From Camelus ferus (lineage: Eukaryota), in the NCBI RefSeq assembly GCF_009834535.1, contig NC_045704.1, positions 12,090,001 to 12,154,000 on the forward strand: a DNA stretch of 64,000 nucleotides, in the 5' to 3' direction. This document shows positions 14,390-56,518 of this stretch, in pieces (within the stretch, counting starts at the first letter, position 1; every line of letters starts with the position of its first letter). Both the position numbers and the translations under genes were made by a program. The notes beneath the pieces were generated by a model. It did not search any database, had not been told where the DNA came from, and saw only the letters and a program-made list of their open reading frames with translations.

Positions 14390-17300
14390 ATGGCCCAGAG
14401 GTCCCAATCTGGCCACCAGAGTGCTCTGCCAGAATTCCTTCCAGCAGCAACTAACAACAACCAAGGCAAGACCCAAGACTCGTCATCAACTACCTTCAGG
14501 CCCCGAGTCAGTACCCAAGACTCTCAGCCCACTGTCCAGAGTCACCAAGTCAGTATTAAAGACTCTCAGCTCACTGTCCAGAGTCACCAAGTCAGTATTA
14601 AAGACTCTCAACCCACTGTCCACAGCCGCCGGGTCAGTATTCAAGAACCCCTGCCAGTTGTCCACAGCCGCCGGGTCAGTATCCAAGAACCCCTGCCAGT
14701 TGTCCACAGCCGCCGGGTCAGTATCCAAGAACCCCTGCCAGTTGTCCACAGCCGCCGGGTCAGTATCCAAGATGCATCATCCATCAGTCACCAAGTCAGT
14801 GCTGAGGACGTGCCACCCATCACCAGCAGTCACCGGGCCAGTGTCCAAGACACACCGTCTGTAATCTACAGTAGCCATTTCAAAACCCGAGATGTCCCAT
14901 CTGTTTTCCATACTCACCGCTTCAGTATCCAAAGCCCTTTGTCAGTGACTCGCACCCCCCGGGCCAATGTAAAATCAGTTACCTGCAGTAGTCAAGTGAG
15001 TATCCCGCCAACAACCCAGAGTCCCCACTCAAGCCTTCAAGTCTCCAGGTCAGTCCGGGCCAGAGTCGATGTCCCCCCATCAATTACTCACAGCCCAGAG
15101 GCCAGTATCAAAAGTAATGAATCAATCATCTGGACCTCCCAGGAGAGCTTCAAAGACACTTTGGATGGTCCCCAACACAACCCAAATACCCCAGAAAGCT
15201 ACCTCTACAGTTCACCATCAGGCAGCTCCACTGAGGGCAGATCTGGCAGGTAAGAGGCAGGGGTCCAGAGAGCTGGTCAGCTTTGGGGCTAGAATTCTGG
15301 GGGAGGGGTATCAGGAAAAGCCAGGGACCAGAGGCATAGTCGGTATAGCAGAGATTGGAGTTTAGAGTTAGGGTGTGGCTGGGCTTGAAAGCTGGATCTG
15401 AAGGCTTGCTCTGGGTGGGGACTGGCATAGAGGCTGGACCTGTGATTCAACCTAGAGAATAGATTTGGGGGTGGCAAGGCCTGGAAGCTAGATCTGGAGG
15501 CAAGGGAGCCTAGAGGCTGAACCCAGGTGAGCATGTCCTAGAGGGAGATACAGGGCATGGAGAACAGACATAGGCAAAATAGAGTCTGAAGGTTAGACTT
15601 GGGGGGACAGGGTCTGATAGCTGGACCTGGGGTGGCTGGGCTGGGTGGCTGGACTCAGTGCTGACACTGGTAATGGGCAATCTGCTGCAGGTTTCGGGAC
15701 AGGTGTAGACTCAGCCATTCCCAGCTGCCCATGGGCTGGCGGCTGCTGCATGAGGCCAAGAAGATCAGTCACCAGCTGAGCCTGGTGCTGAGCCTGGCCG
15801 GCATGGTGACCATCGGTCTCATCTCTCTGGGCCAGCACTGGATCCACTTCCAGGTGCCACTGATGCCCCCTGGGGATGCTGCTGGCTACCCCACCATCCT
15901 CATCAATACCATCTTCTTTGTGCAGTGCCCTGACACCTCCTGCCAGAATGAGTACGACCAGAATGCTTGTAAGACCTACCCTACACTCACTGTTCCTGGG
16001 ACTCATCTCTCCTCTTTGTCCCAGGGACCCTCTTCTGCCTTCCCCGGATTGGTCCTCACTGCCCTGGGCTAGTTCTCCCCTCTCCATGACAGTTCCCACT
16101 ACCCTTGAATAGTCCCCCTTTCCCCCAAGACGGTCCTCACTGCCTATGCTCATTCTCACCTACATGATACCCATCCTCACAATTCTCATGACCCTAGCAA
16201 CTGGTACATAATCCTGAGGCTTTTTCACCCCAAGGAATCTGTCCTCATCACATCAAATTAGTTCCTCAATGCCCAACCCACTTGTCACTGCCCAAGAACC
16301 TGTCCTCAATGACCTAGAGGCATCTGCCTCAATACCCCATCTCTAGAGCCCAATTTCAATTTCCTTAAAATAGGGATGAAGAATTTTCAAGGGAGAGGAC
16401 TTAAGACTACTTCCAGACTCCCCGGGGACCCTCTCCCCCATGCTCAGGGCCTCAGGGCCCATCTTGGTGTCCTGATTTTCTTCCTTCCCCAGACTTACTG
16501 GACTTTGCCTGGGCCTTCCTCCTCATTGCAAGCACTTCCAGCTTCTGCCTCTGCATCATCCTCATAAACATCGTCTTCTTCACAAGCACCAACACGCCCA
16601 TGCTGGACTTCTCCAGTGTCATCATCAGCATCCTGACAGGCATGGCACTGAGACCTGTCCCTGAGGAACCAAGTAGAGGAGTTCCCTGCCCAGTGCCTCT
16701 CCTGATAGCCAACCTCTCCCCACCACACTCCAACGCCATCCTCATTTTCACCTTCAACCCCAATCCCAGTACTATCTCCCTCCAAATCTCCAGTCCACCC
16801 CAATAAAAAATATTAACTTCCAACCCAACCCCATCTCCAGTCCAAGTCCACTCCATCACCAACAGATCTCAAAATCACTCACATTCCCTTCTGTGATATC
16901 CATCCCCATCCATACCCCCACTCCAATTCTATCTTCTTTCCAATCGCCAAGCCCTTTACAAACATCAACACAACTCAACTCCATGCCTAACCCTCCTCAA
17001 GACTCATTCCAAATCCAAACTACCCCTCTTACCTGTGAATCTCAACCCAACCCATTCCCAACCTCATGGTCTTACCAGTCTCCAATCCATACTCATCCCC
17101 AACCACAACTCATCCCCACCCCTCAAACCAGCCTCAGCCTCAGTGTCCATCACTCAGTCTTCAACTATCCAATACTCAACCCTGTGTCCAGTTCCCACCC
17201 CATCCCGTCTCACCAACACCAGCAGCTCAGTGATTTTGTTCAAGCTACTTAATTTTTCTGAGCCACAGTTTTCTTATCTGTAGGATGGGATAACATTTCC

Positions 17301-21325: not shown

Positions 21326-21456
21326 GGGGGGGGGGGTAGGGTATAGCTCAAATGGTAGAGCGCCTGCTTAGCATGCATGAGATCCTGGGTTCAATCCCCA
21401 GTACCTCCTCTAAAAATAAATAAATAAACCTAACTACCTCCCACTACCCTCCAAAA
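21326..21456 (+). mobile_element. vic-1-like SINE with an 11-bp TSD
   Basis: tRNA-Ala-like head; target site duplication GAAAAGACACC at 21315-21325 and 21457-21467. Confidence 0.88.
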
Positions 21457-21519: not shown

Positions 21520-22520
21520 ACCAGGGGTGTACCCCAAATCTGGCCCCCAAACAGCCCCAGGAGTCCAGGCCTCCTGCCCCTTCCTCAAACCTCCAGCCTC
21601 CGGTCCCGCCCCTCCCCCTCACCGCGCAGGCTCGGCCTCTAATTCTGCGCCACGCGACTCTTTCCCAGAACGCCCACCTGTCAAACTCCGTACTGGGTCC
21701 GGCCTCCCACTCTGCGGCTGGGACGTCGCCGGGGCCTGCCCCGCCTCTGCAAGCGCAGCTAGCGCCACTGCAGTGCTGGAAATTCCAGTTGCTTCCCCTT
21801 CTGGCCCCGCCCACACCCGGAAGGGGGCCTTCCCCTTCATGGCCCGCCTTTGGTGCTGTTCACAGAATTGCCTGACCCTCATGACAGGAGAACGGGTCCC
21901 AGTTTTTCCTTGCCCCTTTTCTCCGTCCCCAGGGACAACATCCCACCGTCTGGTCGGGAAGATTCTAGAGGAGACAGGTAGTATTCCCTTCCATAAGCAC
22001 CGAAGCGGGGTTTCCGACACCGGCGTATGTGCTGGACGCCTCGGTGTGAAGCCCGGTCTGGCGCTGGGGGGCAGGCCGCTCGCACGGCGCGCTCTATAAA
22101 GCAGGACACGCTGCAGCCTGCACACGCGGTGGGGAGAGCGAGTGTGAGGTGAGCTTTGTTTTACTATTGGGTCTTTTCTGGGTTTTGCGGTGGGGTGTGC
22201 GTTGGGACCTGGGTCGTGCGTGTCGCGTGGTGCCCAGGACTGCAGCAAGGGCGGCCACTATGTCGCGTGGGCCGAGTCTGGGCCCAGCTAGCCTGAGTGT
22301 TACTTGCGGGGCGGGCAGTGGCGTCCGGAGAGGGTGGGGGCTCTCTGGGGGCGCTCAGGGGGTCGGGGAGGACTCCTGCCGCCGAAGCGAACCGAGGCCC
22401 CCAGGGCTAGTTCCTCTTTCTCTGCACCGCAGCCTGGCTACGCCATTTCTGCTGCCCACGTCGCAGGGCTCCGCCATCTTGTCCATGTCGGGGGCGGGGG
22501 GTGCAGGCAGGGGGCTAGTG
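21520..22520. promoter_or_regulatory. CpG island promoter of the SNORD88 host / gag gene, with TATAAA at 22095-22100
   Basis: CpG-dense, GC boxes, CCGGAAG ETS-like site, TATAAA followed by a strong donor GAG|GTGAGC at 22149. Confidence 0.75.
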
Positions 22521-23837
22521 ACATTGAATATTTCTTTGTGAAGTTTTCCACCCCCTTTCTCGCTACACGTACTCTCCTTAGGAAATCGCTTTTGTATTTT
22601 TGATTCCACGTGGCTGGCATTTTTGTGCAGCATAGAACAAAGCCTGTGGGAGAGGTAGAGGCAGGATCTCAGGAGTTACTAAGGAAGAAGTGGGAGTGAG
22701 GTCTTTAAGTACTGTGTTGTTTCCGAGAACTAGATAGAAGTGGTTTTAGGAGAAAGTTAGTGAGGCCTTTGTTCACTTTTAGGAATTATCCTCACACGGC
22801 CACTCAAATATCAGAATTTTGAAATCACTTAGAACCTCATAGTTTTATTAAACGTCAGTCCTGGGGCTGATCGGTCCTAAGATCTTTTTGGACATCAGTT
22901 GCTTGACGCCTGAGCAATGCAGCGCCCCTGGCAAGGAGAGCCAGCCCACGAGCAAATAGCTGATTTTCTGTCTCCCCACAGCAACCCAGCAAGAATCCCT
23001 TCTGAGTTTCTCCCTTCAGTCAACCGTCTAGAAAACTGTTGAGTTTACACTTACTCTTGCCAAGTCACAAGTGGAATTTCTCGTCCATTCATCTTTGGAG
23101 TGCGCCCTCTTTTGCCATTGTCCGATATATCCCTTTTTTCACGCCCTTTTTTCCTTTTTATTTTTCAGATCCTCAAACATACGGGGAAACAGACATGTTT
23201 AATAGTTACAACATTTCACCAAGTTTGCTTTTTTGTCCTTAGTGTTCTGAAAGTATATTTCTTATTTCATCCAAAATAGTTAATACTTGTGTCTCTAAAA
23301 TAACGTTTTTCTAGGTAATGACAGTGCTGTTGTCACCCTCAATGAGATTTGTTCCTTAATGATACCATCTTCTATCTGCTTAGTGCTCATAGTTCCTAAA
23401 TCATCTCCAAAACGTCTTTCGCAGTTGACTTGTTCAAAAACGGTTGTGCTTAAGGGTCTCTGGTCATTGCTTACACTTCTTATATTTTAGGTTTCTTTTT
23501 CTCCCTTTATTCCCCCACAACAGGCTCTTCCAAGGGATTTCCATCTTAGCTTTCGCTGTATAGAGTTAGCAGGTACAGCCAGTGCTAGAAATCTGCAGAA
23601 CTGAGACAAGAGGAGTAGTGAGTAGTGAGCAGGGTCTCAACATGTAATGGGTTTGGAGACAGTCCCTTGTGGACCTGTGAGACTGGGGAGGTGGGGGCAT
23701 CTTGGTGTCTCCATAGGGAAAGCTGTGGGCATTTGTACCCTCCTGATGGTTTTTTGTGTTTCTCAGTCTCTAAGTGCTGTTAGCTTGGCCTCTGTTCCTG
23801 AAGGTGAGTGGCCTTGGGATCTGGTTGCAGAGGGACC

Positions 23838-23933
23838 TGGGCTCCAATGATGTCCAGCACTGGGCTCTGATCACCCCTGAGGACACAGTGCCCCCCAAGG
23901 ACCTTTGACACCTGGGGATCTGAGGTGCCCTGG
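23838..23933 (+). ncRNA. SNORD88C: Box C/D snoRNA SNORD88 (88C-like copy)
   Basis: C box ATGATGT 23847, guide AGCACTGGGC + D' CTGA, C' TGAGGA, D box CTGA 23920-23923, terminal stem; guide complementary to 28S GCCCAGUGCU. Confidence 0.88.
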
Positions 23934-25352
23934 TTTTGATGTTCTCTGGACCCCCAAACTGTTTCCTCTCCCACTCTCACCAAATCCTTCCTGTGTTACA
24001 GGTGTGTCTTCAAGCTGAGGGGCCACCCACCACCACCCCATCTTGGTAAGACCCCTTATGCCTACTCCCTGACCCACTCAGATCTAAAATAACTCACCCT
24101 TGTTTTCAGTGCCTTCACATCAGATACCTCTGGGACCTAATTTATATGCCAGCAGTCATGCTTGGGATTTACCTAGCTCTGCTGTTCTTGGGCTTAGAGG
24201 TGTTAATCAAGTGATTGCTCTCCTGAGCCTCAATTACTCTGCCTGTAGAGTGGGCACAACACATCAGGAACAGATGGGCCCCTAGGCCTCTGTGCAGTTG
24301 GGTGGGGGGTAGTGATGTTTCCTGCCTTCACAGGTGAGGGTTGGATAAGGCGAGGAGTACATGGGCTGTGGAAGGGGAAATATATATGGTCATTTCTCAG
24401 TGTCCATGGGGGATCGGTTCCTGGGGCCCCATAGATACGGAGGGTAATGTGTATGTATTTGGGTTTCAGGGAAAAGGACTAATCAGAAAGCTAATTTTCA
24501 AACTCAGCAGAAGAAAAGAAACAGCAGGGCTGGAATCATTATCACTCTTACAGTGGGGAGCGGCAGCGGGTGTAGACTGAATACAGTGTCGCCTTCAGCA
24601 AAGATTAGGCAGTTTCCCCATGAATCATATCTCTATAAACTGATACAGTTATTAAGGTTACCCTCAATTTACACAGTAGCCATTGTCAAAGGATGTGGTT
24701 TATCTGGAGAATGTTTCAGGAGTGTTTCAAAGAGCTAAATCATCAGATAAGTTGGTATGTGTGTTCCCCAAAAAGAAACAAGTGTTCTGAGCTCTAGGAG
24801 GCTTTTTCTCTGTCCCTTGGGTGTGGGGAGCGAGGAGGATCATGGCTCTGGTGGAACAGTCCTGACTTCTCAATAGAGTCTGGACCCAAATCTCCATTCC
24901 CATTAATAAGGTTGATTTCTGATAACAGATGGGAACGATTGTTTTCTAAATACATAACAGAGAGAACAGAAAGGGTATTCTCTGAGGTTCTCAGAGGTTT
25001 AGACTCCTGCCGACAAGCACCTTAGGGATGAGAGCTGCGTGCCGTGAAGGGTTAGCTCAGAATGCAGCTCATCAGAGTGTCTTTCTGGGGGGGCTCATCT
25101 CTCCGTCCTCTGCGGAGCTCTGAACCTCATCGCGGACTGAGGAAATTTCCGGGGAAGTGTGGAGTAGGGAGGGGGCCCGTCGGGCAGGGATATGTGAGGG
25201 GGGCAAGGAGAAGCAAAGCAAGACAGCAGGATAGGGAAGCCCTAAGGGACACGTAACATCTATCGATTTCCGAGGCAGCGCTGTCCAACAGAGCTAGCAA
25301 GATGGAAACGTTCTATGGTCTGGTTGGGGGAGGGAGGCAGTTTAAGGGCACT

Positions 25353-25449
25353 GGGACCCCCATGATGTCCAGCACTGGGCTCTGATCTCTGGTGAGGACA
25401 TGGTGCCCCCGCCCCGGGACCTTTGACCCCTGGGGTTCTGAGGGGTCCC
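25353..25449 (+). ncRNA. SNORD88A: Box C/D snoRNA SNORD88 (positional 88A-like copy)
   Basis: Perfect stem GGGACCCC/GGGGTCCC, C box 25362, same guide and D', D box 25438-25441; A/B naming is by position only. Confidence 0.85.
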
Positions 25450-25849
25450 GCCTATAGGGAAGGGTGGATGGGGGCCATGGTTTCCCTGCACCCCACCAAC
25501 CCTCTCTTGGATCCCCCACCCTTTCCTGTCTGCAGGTGGTTCCTTCAGGAGTTGAGCAGCCTGGCCATCCCTCGGTAAGAACAGAAGAGACTCCCCTTGT
25601 TAATACCATAGTAATCGTTAGACTTACAAGATTCTAAATTTATCGTTCATTAAATCTATAGGGTTAGCTCAGAATGCATGGTAATAGGTCCTGGGTTCGA
25701 TCCCTGCTGCAGAGATGGTTTGGGGAGGGTGGTAAGAGATTGTGAATGCAGGAGGGGCTAGGATTAGAAACAGGCCAACCCAGGGGTGGGGAGGTTAGGG
25801 GCTTTGCAGTGAGGTGTGTTCAGTCAAGGCTCCTGAAGGGGCCATATTT

Positions 25850-25945
25850 GGGGACCCCCATGATGTCCAGCACTGGGCTCTGATCTTCTGTGAAGACACA
25901 GTGCTCCCCCAGGACCTTTGACACCTGGGGATCTGAGGGGCCCCC
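25850..25945 (+). ncRNA. SNORD88B: Box C/D snoRNA SNORD88 (positional 88B-like copy)
   Basis: Stem GGGGACCCC/GGGGCCCCC, C box 25860, guide, D', C', D box 25933-25936. Confidence 0.85.
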
Positions 25946-26146
25946 AGCTCTGTGGAGGGATGGGTGGGGGCTGTGGTTGCCCTGTGTGCCTCCAACCTCC
26001 TCTTCCCCACCCCCACTCCTTCCTTTCTGCAGGTGGTTCCTCCAGGCGTCCCAGAGCGCCACCATTCCTCTGGGTAAGAACAGAAGTTCTCATGAATGCC
26101 ATAATAATCATATTTATTTTATAGTTAACAAAATGTAGAGATTATG

Positions 26147-26351
26147 GGGAGGGTGTAGCTCAGTGGTAGAGTGCATGCCTAGCATGCAGAGGGTCCCAGG
26201 TTCAATCCCCAGTACCTCCATTTTTTTTTAAAAAAAAAAAGCACCTAATTACCTCACCTCCCCAAAGAAATATTTTTTAATAAATAAAATTTTTTTAATG
26301 TGAAATTATATTTTTTTAATGCTCAAAAAAAGAATAATTGAAAAAAATTTT
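26147..26351 (+). mobile_element. vic-1-like SINE with a 15-16 bp TSD
   Basis: TSD AATGTAGAGATTATG(G) at 26132 and 26352; inserted in the last intron of the host gene. Confidence 0.88.
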
Positions 26352-26529
26352 AATGTAGAGATTATGGTAATAGTATAAAGGCAAATGCTGAGCACGTAAC
26401 TGACCGGGCACATTTCTAAGCACTGGATTCATTTAATCTTCACAGTAACGCCATGATGTTGGGGGTGGGGGAAGCTGCTACAGGAGCAGCTGGTGTGGGG
26501 GGAGCGTTGCATTGGGACATCCAGTATCA

Positions 26530-26620
26530 GAGCACCCATGATGCCTAGCACTGGGCTCTGATCTCCCATGAGGATACCGTGCCCCCCAGGACCTTGACAT
26601 CCGGGGGTCTGCGGGGCCCA
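26530..26620 (+). pseudogene. Fourth, degenerate SNORD88 copy (D box CTGC)
   Basis: ATGATGCCTAGCACTGGGCTCTGA...TGAGGA...CTTGACAT...GGTCTGC; guide and D' intact, D box mutated at 26612, weak terminal stem. Confidence 0.75.
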
Positions 26621-26740
26621 GCTCCAGGGAGGTGCCTGGTGGCCGGGTGTGTGGGGCTATTTCTCTGTGCCCTCCCTGCAGCACCCGTGGCCGCGCCCCT
26701 CCCGGCCTCTTCCCGTCCCCCAGCTGGAGCAGCCACAGCC

Positions 26741-27607
26741 ATGGCCGAGAGAGCCCTGGCGCCCACCCAGGTGGGGCGGGGCGACCGCTACTACACGTAC
26801 ACTGAGCTCCTGGCCATCGCGCGGCGCTTCAGGCAGAACCCCAATGAGCTCATGATCACCTGGATCCTGCGGGTGTATGACCAAGGGGGCCCAGCGCTGT
26901 CCCTGAATTCCGGGGAGCTGGCGCTGCTGGGCGACCTGACCAGTGATGCCGTCTTCAACTACCACTGCAAGGCCCTGCGGGGTGGCTGCCGAACGCTGCT
27001 GGCCTGGCTGCTGCTGGCCTGGCGCCAGCGCTGGGAGTCCTTCCTGCACTTCGAGGCCACTGAGCTGCCTTTCCGGCCCTGGACCACCATGGAGGAGGGC
27101 ATCCAGCTGGTGCGCGAGCTGGGCATGCTGGACTGGATCTACCGAGAGCCACCCCTGCCCAGCGAGCCTGAGCGCCCGGCGCCCGAGGACGTGCCCTTCA
27201 CGCAGGGCCTGCAGCGGCGCCTGCTGACGGCCGCTCCCTCCGAGCTGCGGCTCTCGCTGGTCAGCCTTCTGGTCAAGGGCATGACGGTGCTGGAGGCGGT
27301 GATGGAGATCCAGACCATAGCCGATGTTGGCCTGCTCTGGCGCCAGAGCCAACCTGGCCGCACCAAGCTCATGCTGGGGCCCAACCCAACGCGCAAGGAC
27401 CTCATGGGCTGGCTGCTGAGCCACGGCGTGCCCAGGGAGCGGGTGGACAAGCAGCCCACCAAGGTCCTCCTGGAGCTGTACATCAAAGAGGCCAAGCGCA
27501 GCCGCAGCCATGCCGCCTACGGGCTGGAGGAGGAGCAGCCCCCGCCTCCCCCATACTCTGACCAGGCCAGCGGAGGGGACCCGTCAGTGCCCGTGCGCCA
27601 CGACTAG
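26741..27607 (+). CDS. C19orf48: Intact single-exon ORF, 288 aa, ERV-L/Fv1-like Gag capsid-derived protein (C19orf48 orthologue)
   Basis: Acceptor CCCCAG at 26718-26723, Kozak GCCATGG. Motifs YTYTELL..RQ..E...WILRVYDQGG..L...E...LG.L..D..FN, LLAWL...W..RW, EEGIQLVRELGMLDWI, PEDVPFT..L...L..AAP and WLLSHGVPRERVDKQPTKVLLELY align colinearly with recalled HERV-L/MuERV-L Gag. The internal MTVLEAV..EIQ and EE.PPP.PY.DQ match the recalled human C19orf48 peptide. Confidence 0.88.
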   Translation: MAERALAPTQVGRGDRYYTYTELLAIARRFRQNPNELMITWILRVYDQGGPALSLNSGELALLGDLTSDAVFNYHCKALRGGCRTLLAWLLLAWRQRWESFLHFEATELPFRPWTTMEEGIQLVRELGMLDWIYREPPLPSEPERPAPEDVPFTQGLQRRLLTAAPSELRLSLVSLLVKGMTVLEAVMEIQTIADVGLLWRQSQPGRTKLMLGPNPTRKDLMGWLLSHGVPRERVDKQPTKVLLELYIKEAKRSRSHAAYGLEEEQPPPPPYSDQASGGDPSVPVRHD

Positions 27608-28290
27608 GCCCCAGGGTCCAGCTGGTTCTCAGAGCGGGGCAGGGAGGCTAAATCCCAGGCGAGCCAACTGGCAGGGAACAGGGACATTGGAGGGGAGGCC
27701 CAAAGCCTCGGCAGGGTCTCCTGTGTGCCCCTGAATGGACTGAGGGACGCCCCTGGCCACCCTGTGGGCCTCACTGGCCAGAGCTGGAGATGAACGGCTC
27801 CTGGCCGAGAGCTGCCGCAGGATTCGGGGAGAGTCTGCTACATTTCATTCTGATACACTTGAGCCCAGTGGGTGTCGGGGGGTTGGTACCCACCGCTCTG
27901 CCACCTGGGCCCCCAAAGCACTGCAGGCCAAGTGGGAGAGCCCGAAGCCCACGACATGGAAGCACCTGGAAGTTTGCACACTTTCTCAAGGCTTGTTTTA
28001 AATGCAGTATTTTAACCTGTTACTTTTTCAGCGTAGAAGGGGTTTTAGGGAGGCTCTTTCCCCCCTTTGTGATGTCTTTTCTCTTGAGACCTTTTTTATG
28101 CAAGGCCTTTTCTCTTTTAAAATGGAACTTTGCCCTTTGCTCACCTGGGGAAGGTGCAGCCTGTTTCTTCCGGTTCCTCTAGCTGGGTGTGTGGCTGGAG
28201 TGTCTGCTAAATGCCTGGGTGAGGAGTGCTGGGGCCCAGAACCCCAGCTTTGTGGGGATGGACAGCCCTGGCAGACAGTGCCAGGCACCC

Positions 28291-28296
28291 ATTAAA
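28291..28296 (+). terminator. ATTAAA polyadenylation signal of the gag/host transcript
   Basis: ATTAAA followed about 20 nt later by a GU-rich tract (ctgtgtgtgagctgtgctgtttgg). Confidence 0.55.
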
Positions 28297-28877: not shown

Positions 28878-33060
<4,183 letters not shown>

Positions 33061-33589
33061 TTCCACACAGCCAGACGCTGAGCTCAGCCCGCTGTCTGTG
33101 CCGCAGCCCCACCTGCTCATTACCCGGCCTGAGCCACCCCCCCAGGAGAGCAGGTCCCAGCACGCCTCCCCCTGGAGCCCGATCCCCCGGGGCCTTCGTC
33201 AGCCTTGGATTAACCCATGGAGTAACCCACTTCATCTTTACCGCAACCCCAGGAATCATCTATCTGATCATCACCCCCTCCATTGCTCAGATGGAGAAAG
33301 CGAAGCACAGCGCGGTTAAGTAATTCGCCCACAGGAACACGCTAGTGAGCAGCAAAGCTGGGATTTGAACCTGGGCGCCCTTAAACTGGGCATAGAGGGA
33401 GGGAGAGACCCCTGCCCCTGCCCCACATTCTAGACTCCTCCCTCCCCATGCCACCCATCACCGCTGAGTTGGTTCTTTTCCACACCCCTTAAATACTGGG
33501 GCTCTTTGAGGCTCTCTTGGGCCTCCTGGTGATTCTGTCTTCTTCCCGAGCCACCAGCAACTGGCGAACCCACGTGGCCCAGCGATCGG

Positions 33590-35339: not shown

Positions 35340-35900
35340 TAGGGGTGTGTATTGATCTGCTAATAAACGACCACAAGCTGGCTGGCTTAGACACCAGAAA
35401 CTATCGTCTCCCAGTTTTGGAGGCCAGAATTTCAAAATCACGTTCTCAGAAGAGGGGGGTGGGGAGAAGGAGGGTAGAGCTCAGTGGTAGAGCACATGCT
35501 TAGCATGCACCAAGTCCTGGGTTCAATCCCCAGTGCCTCCATTAATAAATAAATAAATAAACCTAGTTATCTCCCCCCACCAAAAAAATCCTGTTGCTAA
35601 AAAACAACAATAATAAACAAACCAAATAAGAAAAAAGAAGAGAAAAACTCAAGGTGTCGGCAGGGTTGGTCCCTTCTGAGGGCTGCAAGGAAGGAGCTAT
35701 TCCCTGCCCGTCCCCAGCTTCTGGTGTTACTGACAACCCTTGGCTTATAGAAGCATCAGTCCGGACTTTGTGGTCACGTGGCCTTCTCCGTGTGTCTGTT
35801 TCTGGGTCTCTTCTGGGACACCAGTTATGACCGGATCTTAAGTTGATTTACGTCCACAAAGACCCTATTTCCAAATAAAGTCACATTCACAGGTAACAGG
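35340..35900 (-). mobile_element. MLT1 MaLR LTR interrupted by a vic-1-like SINE (about 35461-35650)
   Basis: The LTR text (accacaagctggctggcttag...caaggtgtcggcagggttggtcccttctgagggctg...ccaaataaagtcacattcacagg) is split by a SINE head and tail. Confidence 0.65.
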
Positions 35901-50965: not shown

Positions 50966-52084
50966 CTAAGCAGGAGGGTTTCCAGGTTTTACCTGAAGGT
51001 TTCCATTATCTCCCGAGGGCTTCAACTCAGGGACAGGCTGACTGAGAAACCCCTCCTCACCAAATGCTCTGGCCAGGGCAAAAGGCAAAGACTGGAAAAT
51101 TTTTTCTTAGAAATCTCTGCCAACAAAGACATAGAGGAAAGTGTTGAGGCTGCTGTTGAAACAACCCAGGGAGAATGTAGCCCAGACGATAAGCAGCATC
51201 CTGGGGTCGGATTCCTTTTGCTCTAACAATTGGACCAAGCGCACCATGTTAAACAGGAACCAGGAGATGAAAAAGGCACTCACCAACACCAGCAGCAACC
51301 TCTTTGGCCAGCTAACATGGACCCAGCCCTCCCACCGGAGCCTGGTGCAGATGAGGTGAGCACAGGTACCGATGATCGCCAAGGGTACCAAGAAACCCAG
51401 CAGGAAGCGAATGACAGTCTTAGTCACTTGCCTCCCCCAAACTATTGGCTTCCAATCCTGGGAGTTCTCCTCCCCCTTATTGTCTATGTCGAACTTGAAG
51501 TAGCAGTAGAAACATTCTTTCAGTGTTCCAGTGGCCTGGAATTTCAAGTACGGAGAGGAAGCAACAGTAGCCAAGGGGCCACATGCCAACAGCCAGCCAG
51601 GTTGCCTGCTGTACGGTGTGGTGGTTTCGTGATCAGACAGGGTAGATGACAGAGATGCAGTGGTCCACAGAGATGAGGACCAGGAGGCAGACACTGGTAA
51701 AGAAGTTGGTCAAGAAGGCCATGTAGAGCTTGCAGGCCAATTTGCTGAGGAACCACTGGCCACTGGCTATGGTGTATATGGCGATGGGCAGGGACAGTAA
51801 GAAAGACGTTGGCAAGGGCCAGGTTGAAGAACCACATGGTAGTGACAGTGTGGGCCAGTCGGAAAACTGTCATCCAGAGCACCAGCCCGTTGACCACTAT
51901 ACCAACCACAAAGGACACAGACATAATGGCCATGGTCAGTGGGCGGAGGCACCCCACCTCCTCAGGATGGCATTTGGAAGCAGAGGTAGAATTCATCCTT
52001 CTAGAATAGGAAGGACCATATGTTAGTGCTACGTTACTGTTCACTGCTTTTCAGAGCCCAGGGTTCCCTCTGACACTCCTTCAT
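50966..52084 (-). pseudogene. GPR32: GPR32 pseudogene
   Basis: Colinear with recalled human GPR32 (EEVG.LRPLT, NGLVLWMTVFR, ISVD.CISV.YPV, GTCAHLI, KRLLLVLVSAFF, NSSLN.FLYVFVGRDF). Indels in the N-terminus, frameshifts near 51800 and 51568, TGA at 51633-51635, TAA at 51107-51109. Confidence 0.9.
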
Positions 52085-56375: not shown

Positions 56376-56518
56376 NNNNNNNNNNNNNNNNNNNNNNNNN
56401 NNNNNNNNNNNNNNNNNNNNNNNNNNNNNNNNNNNNNNNNNNNNNNNNNNNNNNNNNNNNNNNNNNNNNNNNNNNNNNNNNNNNNNNNNNNNNNNNNNNN
56501 NNNNNNNNNNNNNNNNNN
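56376..56518. other. Assembly gap (143 N)
   Basis: Directly visible. Confidence 1.

What the first reader, a model, noticed from the sequence alone, without database searches (positions are those of the whole stretch)
26741..27607. Candidate domesticated ERV-L (Fv1-like) gag gene hidden in the C19orf48/SNORD88 locus
Seen: an intact 288-codon ORF with a host-type splice acceptor, strong Kozak and poly(A) signal, overwhelmingly G/C-ending codons and retained CpGs. There are no adjacent LTR, PBS, pro or pol sequences. Knowledge: its motifs align colinearly with the capsid region of class III HERV-L/MuERV-L Gag (YT.KELL...Q..GE..W.WILRVWD.GG; EEGIQRLREIGM.EWI; PEDIP.T.ALR.R..RAAP; WL..HGVPR.EID.KPT..LL.LY, recalled), the family that gave rise to the mouse restriction factor Fv1. 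ERV-L proviruses are normally decayed and not GC-rich. Inference: an old, independently co-opted capsid gene under purifying selection. It may be an Fv1-like antiretroviral factor, or an Arc/PEG10-style capsid that packages RNA.
Basis: partly seen in the sequence, partly recalled or inferred. Interest (0 to 1): 0.95.

Follow-up and report, generated by a model that had tools for sequence, protein, structure and literature searches.

The report
Ancient Fv1-like gag gene in SNORD88 host
The last exon of a snoRNA host gene (the C19orf48 counterpart) in this camelid sequence encodes a real 288-residue protein that descends from the rear half of an ERV-L-type retroviral Gag. It is related to the mouse antiviral gene Fv1 and has been kept at this locus across placental mammals, but databases only auto-label it "Fv1-like" and its function is unknown.

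Summary
An intact ORF lies at 26741-27607 (+), 288 codons, with GC3 0.89, CpG o/e 0.60 against about 0.30 in the flanks, and a good Kozak context. It sits in the terminal exon of a gene whose introns carry four SNORD88 copies.

The retroviral origin is confirmed by sequence:
- A profile of its orthologues hits a bona fide rodent Fv1 (E 1.7e-21; pairwise 32% identity, E 1e-23).
- The same profile hits a Gag (E 1.3e-20) that lies directly upstream of a pol with RT, RNase H, integrase and dUTPase.
- No LTR, pol or N-terminal gag remnant is left in the window.

Orthologues exist in Laurasiatheria, rodents, armadillo and tenrecs. SNORD88 lies just upstream in all six other loci where it could be checked. 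Pairwise dN/dS is 0.21-0.69, and was significantly below 1 in all nine pairs bootstrapped.

The protein matches only the C-terminal, virus-binding part of Fv1. It lacks Fv1's N-terminal coiled coil, has no zinc knuckle, and carries a conserved C-terminal PPxY. Fold searches found no significant capsid match.

It is not "hidden": NCBI names the orthologues "Friend virus susceptibility protein 1-like" and Pfam files the C-terminus as DUF5535. I found no paper describing it. The most likely mechanism is a truncated-Gag decoy acting on ERV-L-like Gag or capsids; this is inferred, not shown.

The parts
26741..27607 (+). Coding sequence of the Gag-derived protein (288 codons plus stop)
   Evidence: Intact ORF. 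Pfam DUF5535 E 1.6e-53. 57 homologues, many named Fv1-like. dN/dS 0.21-0.69.
26786..27319 (+). Residues 16-193, the region homologous to the C-terminal (virus-binding) part of Fv1
   Evidence: BLASTP against Lophuromys Fv1 residues 217-391: 32% identity, E 1e-23. Profile hit E 1.7e-21. pLDDT is mostly above 85 in the second AlphaFold model.
27281..27580 (+). Residues 181-280, Pfam DUF5535. This part is also Gag-derived.
   Evidence: The alignment to Gag P0086 runs to residue 251. DUF5535 is matched only by the 20 placental orthologues in alignment A3.
27545..27556 (+). PPPY (PPxY) motif in the disordered C-terminal tail
   Evidence: Present in 35 of 58 orthologue-set proteins. The tail 259-288 has pLDDT below 50.
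26724..28296 (+). Inferred terminal exon, from the acceptor (alternative start 26682) to the first poly(A) signal, ATTAAA at 28291
   Evidence: Mapping of the Camelus ferus model P0001; sequence. The 3' end was not verified.
26530..26619 (+). SNORD88 copy 4, in the last intron, 62 or 104 nt before the acceptor
   Evidence: Rfam, 83 bits.
25852..25943 (+). SNORD88 copy 3
   Evidence: Rfam, 99.2 bits.
25354..25448 (+). SNORD88 copy 2
   Evidence: Rfam, 95.6 bits.
23839..23930 (+). SNORD88 copy 1
   Evidence: Rfam, 100 bits.
26033..26073 (+). Short upstream exon with no ATG (cag|G...G|gtaag)
   Evidence: P0001 mapping and sequence. Part of duplicated unit D4.
25536..25574 (+). Short upstream exon with no ATG, a paralogue of 26033-26073
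24002..24045 (+). Candidate short exon 71 nt after SNORD88 copy 1, with no ATG
   Evidence: Splice-site reading of the sequence. Inferred.
22000..22500 (+). CpG-rich promoter region and first exon of the host gene. TATAAA at 22095-22100; exon 1 ends near 22148.
   Evidence: GC 0.67, CpG o/e 0.82. P0001 exon 1 is 100% identical.

Best explanation
Shown: this is a genuine protein-coding gene. It is a single coding exon forming the 3'-terminal exon of the SNORD88 snoRNA host gene (the C19orf48 counterpart) of a camelid. The protein descends from roughly the rear 55% of the Gag of a class III (ERV-L-type) retrovirus. Everything else of the provirus is gone. The gene has been inherited at this locus since before the placental radiation and is under moderate purifying selection. 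It is a relative of mouse Fv1 but not its orthologue.

Inferred (about 0.4-0.45 likely): the protein works as a Gag decoy. Its helical Gag-derived core (residues about 16-260) would bind Gag or capsid assemblies of ERV-L-like or other retroelements and disturb them. Because it lacks the N-terminal multimerising part, this would resemble truncated or defective Gag inhibitors (Ty1 p22, sheep enJS56A1 Gag) more than full Fv1. The exposed PPxY in the tail would link it to WW-domain/NEDD4-type ubiquitin ligases. Riding on a snoRNA host transcript would give it broad, housekeeping-type transcription. In the exon model read here, its ATG is the first AUG of the spliced mRNA. The confidence figure refers to this mechanism; the identity part I hold at about 0.95.
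For: - Identity. Pfam DUF5535, E 1.6e-53. A profile of 20 orthologues searched against 1.8 billion representatives gives 309 hits. They include 'Fv1 restriction factor [Lophuromys flavopunctatus]' at E 1.7e-21, and P0086 at E 1.3e-20. P0086 lies directly upstream of a 1129-aa ORF with RVT_1, RNase_H, rve and dUTPase.
- Pairwise BLASTP. 32% identity, E 1e-23 to Fv1 residues 217-391. 29% identity, E 5e-23 to P0086 residues 226-478.
- Age and orthology. Named orthologues come from camel, carnivores, ruminants, hippo, bats, rodents, armadillo and tenrecs. SNORD88 lies immediately upstream in six other loci. The NJ tree gives one clade that roughly follows the species tree.
- Selection. dN/dS is 0.21-0.69, and the bootstrap 95% CI is below 1 in all nine pairs tested.
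- Truncation. Fv1 residues 76-215 align to the N-terminal part of Gag P0086, which the window protein lacks. Nothing of it is found in the window.
- Tail motif. PPxY is present in 35 of 58 orthologue-set proteins, in a tail predicted to be disordered.
- Precedents for Gag-derived inhibitors: Fv1 (PMC3948346, PMC7313476), Ty1 p22 (PMC8458377, abstract seen) and defective JSRV Gag (PMC8922424).
Against: - No functional, expression or translation data were available.
- Fold searches of both AlphaFold models against PDB and BFVD gave no significant hit. The best retroviral Gag hits had E about 1.2-2.4, so capsid-like architecture is not structurally confirmed.
- The coiled coil that the literature calls essential for Fv1 restriction is absent.
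- dN/dS around 0.4 is compatible with many kinds of function, and no test for positive selection was run.
- The gene has decayed in some lineages. One degenerate copy spreads the homology over three frames with only a 118-aa ORF left. Cetacean, vespertilionid bat and elephant entries are partial or low quality. So it is dispensable in part of the mammals.
- The PPxY motif is missing in tenrecs and some bats.
Confidence: 0.45

Rival explanations
1. The Gag-derived protein has been re-used for a purely cellular job unrelated to retroelements. One example is a PPxY-bearing adaptor for WW-domain ubiquitin ligases or a trafficking or vesicle factor, in the way Arc, PNMA and RTL genes were re-used.
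For: About 100 My of retention with fairly even constraint along the protein: regional dN/dS is 0.34-0.64. A conserved PPxY sits in a disordered tail. Expression is tied to a housekeeping-type snoRNA host gene. No sign of an arms race was tested or seen.
Against: No zinc knuckle or N-terminal membrane-binding part is present, so there is nothing to support an RNA-packaging particle. The gene has been lost or degraded in several lineages, which is more typical of defence genes than of core cellular genes. There is no Pfam link to Arc, PNMA or retrotransposon Gag families.
Confidence: 0.33
2. It acts exactly like Fv1, as a multimeric factor that coats the capsid lattice of incoming retroviruses after entry.
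For: It is homologous to the very domain of Fv1 that carries the virus-binding specificity (PMC7313476, PMC3948346). This rival is a special case of the defence reading above.
Against: The N-terminal coiled coil, described as essential for Fv1 restriction and multimerisation (PMC3948346), has no counterpart. The protein starts at the equivalent of Fv1 residue about 217. The N-terminal extensions in some gene models are not conserved.
Confidence: 0.1
3. The ORF is kept open for transcript-level reasons, for example to avoid nonsense-mediated decay of the snoRNA host transcript. The protein itself would have little or no function.
For: It lies in a snoRNA host gene. Long ORFs arise by chance in this GC-rich DNA. 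It has decayed in some lineages.
Against: dN/dS is significantly below 1 in every pair tested. Many residues are invariant across 20 orthologues. Indels are in frame. Selection for openness alone would leave dN/dS near 1.
Confidence: 0.07
4. It is the orthologue or direct ancestor of rodent Fv1, rather than an independent co-option.
For: Fv1 is the sister branch of the orthologue clade in a rough NJ tree. Ensembl/UniRef entries even carry the name 'Friend virus susceptibility 1'.
Against: Fv1 keeps about 140 residues of N-terminal Gag homology that this gene lacks in every species. Fv1 lies next to Miip and has degraded LTR fragments in some genera (PMC7313476). Its insertion is dated to about 45 My in Muroidea (PMC8922424). 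Fv1 is 43% identical to MERV-L Gag (PMC3948346) against 32% to this protein.
Confidence: 0.03

Closest known systems
Fv1 (Friend virus susceptibility 1), rodent restriction factor
   Same: Both are ERV-L-type gag-derived host genes with a single ORF and the rest of the provirus lost. Sequence homology is significant over residues 16-193 against Fv1 217-391 (32% identity, E 1e-23). That is the part of Fv1 that determines virus specificity (PMC7313476).
   Different: The locus differs: SNORD88 host gene versus next to Miip. The age differs: placental-wide versus about 45 My in Muroidea (PMC8922424). There is no N-terminal coiled-coil domain. There is an extra conserved C-terminal part (DUF5535) with PPxY. 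It is expressed as the last exon of a multi-exon snoRNA host gene. No function has been tested.
Gag of class III (ERV-L-type) endogenous retroviruses, e.g. P0086 in locus L003
   Same: The two are colinear over residues 10-251 against Gag 226-478 (29% identity, E 5e-23). Neither has a zinc knuckle: 0 of 42 long relatives have one.
   Different: This gene lacks the first about 225 Gag residues, the pol with dUTPase, and the LTRs. It has high GC3 (0.89) and is under purifying selection.
Human C19orf48 / Pfam DUF5535
   Same: The locus type is the same: C19orf48 hosts SNORD88A-C next to the KLK cluster (PMC11306581, PMC4689925). The window protein matches DUF5535 at E 1.6e-53.
   Different: From memory, not tested here: the human annotated product is only about 117 residues, corresponding to the C-terminal part. 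A comparable degenerate state, with a 118-aa ORF left, was seen in an unnamed species.
Ty1 p22/p18 and sheep enJS56A1 Gag (truncated or defective Gag inhibitors)
   Same: This is an analogy of design. Each is a Gag-derived protein lacking part of Gag that interferes with the Gag assemblies of related elements (PMC8458377, PMC8922424).
   Different: The element families are unrelated. Those proteins are encoded by the elements themselves or by recent ERVs. Interference by the window protein is only inferred.
Arc, PEG10, PNMA and RTL (domesticated Ty3/Metaviridae gag genes)
   Same: All are ancient gag domestications conserved in mammals.
   Different: The origin differs: retrovirus class III, not Metaviridae. 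There is no Pfam hit to their families, and no nucleocapsid zinc knuckle or protease.

Membership tests
ERV-L-type (class III) Gag-derived genes | Significant sequence homology to the Gag of an element with gag-pol and a pol-encoded dUTPase | tested here: met
   Profile E 1.3e-20 and BLASTP E 5e-23 to P0086. Its neighbour ORF has RVT_1, RNase_H, rve and dUTPase.
ERV-L-type (class III) Gag-derived genes | Capsid-like all-helical two-domain fold resembling solved retroviral or spumaviral Gag domains | tested here: inconclusive
   The AlphaFold model (pLDDT 80) is all-helical with lobes at 20-133 and 155-259. Foldseek against PDB and BFVD gave no hit with E below 0.3. Retroviral Gag entries appeared only at E 1.2-2.4.
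ERV-L-type (class III) Gag-derived genes | Major homology region | not tested
   The literature places Fv1's MHR overlapping Mus residues 247-276 (PMC3948346). If Lophuromys numbering is similar, that maps to about residues 46-75 here. Family-wide near-invariant residues D47, L55, L63 and G64 lie there. No Mus Fv1 sequence was in hand to check.
Fv1 gene (orthology and working design) | Homology to Fv1 protein | tested here: met
   E 1.7e-21 (profile) and 1e-23 (pairwise), 32% identity.
Fv1 gene (orthology and working design) | N-terminal coiled-coil multimerisation domain, essential for restriction | tested here: not met
   The protein begins at the equivalent of Fv1 residue about 217. Fv1 76-215 aligns to Gag but has no counterpart here or elsewhere in the window. 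The requirement is stated in PMC3948346.
Fv1 gene (orthology and working design) | Same chromosomal locus (adjacent to Miip) | tested here: not met
   The locus here is the SNORD88 host gene. The Fv1 locus is described in PMC7313476.
Fv1 gene (orthology and working design) | Capsid-specific post-entry restriction of retroviruses | not testable with these tools
   No functional data. The test lies outside what this report may propose.
Pfam DUF5535 (PF17687) | Score above the gathering cut-off (25 bits) | tested here: met
   179.7 bits over residues 181-280. All 20 orthologues match, and none of the 53 distant Gag relatives do.
SNORD88 host gene (C19orf48 counterpart) | Same-strand SNORD88 copies in introns immediately upstream of the coding exon | tested here: met
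   Four copies at 83-100 bits in the window. The same arrangement is seen in L001, L002, L005, L006, L008 and L009.
Arc/PEG10-type capsid genes (Metaviridae gag) | Match to retrotransposon Gag, Arc or PNMA families, and/or a CCHC zinc knuckle | tested here: not met
   No such Pfam hit even at E up to 10. No CCHC pattern in any orthologue.

The most novel reading that the evidence does not exclude
This is a placental-wide, roughly 100-My-old truncated-Gag restriction factor, older than and independent of Fv1. It would police ERV-L-type elements, or incoming viruses with similar cores, by poisoning their Gag or capsid assemblies. It would be expressed constitutively by piggy-backing on a snoRNA host gene, and would have been lost in primates and some other lineages.
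Probability: 0.25. Interest if true: 0.8.

Novelty: new member of a known kind. Interest (0 to 1): 0.6.

Why it matters
Fv1 has long been treated as a rodent-only case of a gag gene turned into an antiviral factor. [quoted passage not shown]

A second gene from the same Gag family, far older and kept at one locus across placental mammals, would show that ERV-L-type Gag was domesticated at least twice. It would also give a natural comparison for which parts of Gag are needed.

It would tie the poorly understood C19orf48/DUF5535 family to a concrete origin. It is also an unusual case of a snoRNA host gene whose only conserved coding exon is of viral descent.

The practical caveat is that the homology is already visible in automated database names. 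A large catalogue of co-opted gag genes that I could not read (Wang and Han 2020) may list it.

Tried and rejected
Searches and look-ups that led nowhere:
- Sequence search of the ORF and of the 73-sequence profile against PDB chains gave only chance hits to bacterial G5 domains.
- DNA for the armadillo, tenrec and marmot genes could not be fetched because the files are too large or not on record. Synteny in Xenarthra and Afrotheria is therefore untested.
- I looked for spliced transcript contigs among short Logan contigs. All those fetched were genomic.
- Literature searches for C19orf48 with Fv1 or gag, for DUF5535, and for Fv1-like/homologue terms found no paper describing this gene. One search call failed on a term-length error.
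- Wang and Han 2020, Young et al. 2018 and Boso et al. 2018 are not held.

Readings rejected:
- Chance ORF: rejected on conservation and dN/dS.
- The antisense 284-aa ORF as the real gene: it has no family hit and is not conserved open.
- A recent ERV fragment: rejected because orthologues share the locus.
- Fv1 orthology: rejected on architecture and locus.

Full report
**Observation**

The window holds an intact ORF from ATG 26741 to TAG 27607 on the + strand, 288 codons.
- GC is 0.68 and GC3 is 0.893.
- CpG o/e is 0.60, against 0.29-0.31 in the flanks.
- The start context is gccATGG.

Length alone proves little in this GC-rich DNA:
- Shuffles of the local 3 kb reach 348 stop-free codons.
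- Three other ORFs of 287-331 aa have no family hit.
- A 284-aa antisense ORF overlaps this one.

The antisense ORF has no Pfam hit. It is open for only 115-191 codons in six of seven orthologous loci.

**Gene context**

Rfam finds four SNORD88 copies on the same strand, at 23839-23930, 25354-25448, 25852-25943 and 26530-26619.

I mapped the annotated Camelus ferus protein P0001 onto the window. It is about 97% identical to the window protein over the shared part, so the window is probably a Camelus or a close relative. Reading the splice sites then gives this structure:
- a CpG-rich promoter, with TATAAA at 22095;
- a first exon ending near 22148;
- short ATG-free exons at 24002-24045, 25536-25574 and 26033-26073, each 71-89 nt after a snoRNA;
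- a terminal exon starting at 26724, or alternatively at 26682.

In this model the ORF's ATG is the first AUG of the spliced RNA. This is inference, not transcript evidence.

In human, SNORD88A-C lie in introns of C19orf48 next to the KLK cluster (PMC11306581, PMC4689925).

**What the protein is**

- Pfam gives DUF5535 over residues 181-280 (E 1.6e-53) and nothing else.
- The word-indexed protein search returns 57 homologues, 52-92% identical. They come from camel, dog, cats, bears, ruminants, hippo, many bats, marmot, beaver, jerboa, armadillo and tenrecs, with partial entries from elephant, rhino, donkey and cetaceans.
- Many of these are named by NCBI or UniRef 'Friend virus susceptibility protein 1-like'.
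- A profile of 20 orthologues (A2) searched against 1.8 billion representatives gives 309 hits at E up to 1e-3.
- Among them is P0083, 'Fv1 restriction factor [Lophuromys flavopunctatus]', at E 1.7e-21.
- P0086 (521 aa, E 1.3e-20) lies on its contig directly upstream of a 1129-aa ORF with RVT_1, RNase_H, rve and dUTPase. It is therefore the Gag of a gag-pol element with a pol-encoded dUTPase. I recall that placement as typical of ERV-L; I did not verify it.
- Further relatives come from koala, birds, turtles, a snake, Xenopus and a sturgeon.

Pairwise BLASTP comparisons:

| Pair | Aligned residues | Identity | E-value |
|---|---|---|---|
| ORF vs Fv1 (P0083) | 16-193 vs 217-391 | 32% | 1e-23 |
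| ORF vs Gag (P0086) | 10-251 vs 226-478 | 29% | 5e-23 |
| Fv1 vs Gag (P0086) | 76-404 vs 78-418 | 28% | 1e-29 |

The window protein is thus the rear half of such a Gag. It matches the part of Fv1 that carries virus specificity. It lacks the N-terminal part that in Fv1 holds the coiled coil needed for multimerisation and restriction (PMC7313476, PMC3948346).

tblastn of Gag relatives and of the pol ORF against the window finds only 26708-27481. No LTR-like repeats flank the ORF.

**Age and selection**

- SNORD88 lies immediately upstream of the ORF in all six other loci with enough upstream DNA: L001, L002, L005, L006, L008 and L009.
- A rough NJ tree puts all orthologues in one clade ordered tenrecs, armadillo, Boreoeutheria. 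Fv1 is the sister branch and a koala Gag is next.
- Nei-Gojobori dN/dS over eight coding sequences is 0.21-0.69.
- The bootstrap 95% intervals are below 1 in all nine pairs tested.
- All regions of the protein give 0.34-0.64.
- GC3 is 0.74-0.95 in all orthologues.

The gene is not universal. An unnamed species carries a copy in which the homology is spread over three frames and only a 118-aa C-terminal ORF remains. A tamarin entry is partial. No mouse, rat or human full-length entry appeared, although the word-indexed search excludes proteins shorter than about 158 residues. From memory, the human C19orf48 product is a C-terminal remnant of about 117 aa; I did not test this.

**Anatomy of the protein**

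- With a 73-sequence alignment, AlphaFold gives mean pLDDT 80. The value is above 85 for most of residues 20-200.
- The model is all-helical, with lobes at about 20-133 and 155-259 and disordered ends at 1-14 and 259-288.
- The tail holds PPPY (residues 269-272). A PPxY is present in 35 of 58 orthologue-set proteins. Tenrecs lack it but have a P[ST]AP in the linker.
- There is no CCHC knuckle in any orthologue or in 42 long relatives.
- Foldseek against PDB (both models) and BFVD (improved model only) found nothing significant. A few retroviral Gag or CA entries appear at E 1.2-2.4. PDB sequence searches found nothing.
- A capsid fold is therefore not structurally confirmed. 'Gag-derived' rests on sequence and on the genomic context of relatives.

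**Mechanism**

Shown: a Gag-derived, conserved coding exon on a snoRNA host gene.

Inferred: the most economical function is binding to Gag or capsid assemblies of related elements, as a decoy. Its truncated design is closer to Ty1 p22 (PMC8458377) or defective JSRV Gag (PMC8922424) than to full Fv1. PPxY would offer a link to WW-domain ligases. I give this about 0.45.

The rivals and my estimates are:
- a purely cellular role, 0.33;
- a strict Fv1-type lattice binder, 0.10 (the missing coiled coil argues against it);
- an ORF kept open for transcript reasons, 0.07 (dN/dS below 1 argues against it);
- orthology with Fv1, 0.03.

The last is contradicted by architecture, locus, dating and identity: 43% for Fv1 versus MERV-L in PMC3948346, against 32% here.

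**Novelty**

- The homology is already implicit in automated names, and the C-terminus is a Pfam DUF. DUF5535 matched none of the 53 distant Gag relatives in A3.
- No paper in the searchable library connects C19orf48, the SNORD88 host gene or DUF5535 with Fv1 or gag.
- A catalogue of 177 co-option events (Wang and Han 2020, cited in PMC8922424) could not be read and may include it.
- I file it as a new member of a known kind: domesticated retroviral gag genes.

For the degenerate copy I printed only counts and outer bounds.

Noticed in passing
window 51110-51694 (-): A 195-aa ORF matches only the rear half of the rhodopsin-type GPCR profile (7tm_1 positions 114-260, E 2.5e-08). The adjoining upstream ORF has no hit. 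It may be a truncated or pseudogenised receptor gene.
   Followed up: partly
window 21337-21429, 26148-26240, 35469-35561 and four further tRNA-model hits: Seven hits to the Rfam tRNA model. Three of them form a repeat family with A-rich tails, so they look like tRNA-derived SINEs rather than tRNA genes. One sits in the last intron of the host gene.
   Followed up: partly
window 23832-26621: The snoRNA-plus-exon units are tandemly duplicated: exon pair 25513-25573 and 26010-26070, with about 497-nt spacing. This camelid has four SNORD88 copies, where the human gene is described with three (A-C).
   Followed up: partly
window 14390-15253, 31455-32450, 32457-33323 (+): Three ORFs of 287-331 aa without any Pfam hit. 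They are probably chance ORFs in GC-rich DNA, and a useful yardstick for how little ORF length alone means here.
   Followed up: partly
window 56376-56518: A run of 143 N (gap or masked). It was left untouched.
   Followed up: no
proteins P0110, P0199-P0201: ERV-L-like Gag proteins deposited as 'hypothetical protein [Klebsiella pneumoniae]' on contigs of 0.5-5.6 kb. This is most likely vertebrate DNA contaminating bacterial assemblies.
   Followed up: no
proteins P0135 and P0215-P0217 (chicken 'synoviolin' isoforms) and P0124: Gene models join an ERV-L-like Gag stretch to host domains (RING/TPR in one case, Sushi/EGF in the other). They could be annotation chimeras or real fusions.
   Followed up: no
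proteins P0041 and P0046 (tenrecs): The two tenrec orthologues lack the C-terminal PPxY. They carry a P[ST]AP motif in the inter-lobe linker instead, which is a different late-domain-type motif at a different place.
   Followed up: no
L010-L012 (unnamed species), about 235-1050: A degenerate copy of the gene. The homology to residues 30-270 is spread over three reading frames and only a 118-aa C-terminal ORF is still open. No SNORD88 lies within the short upstream stretch held.
   Followed up: partly
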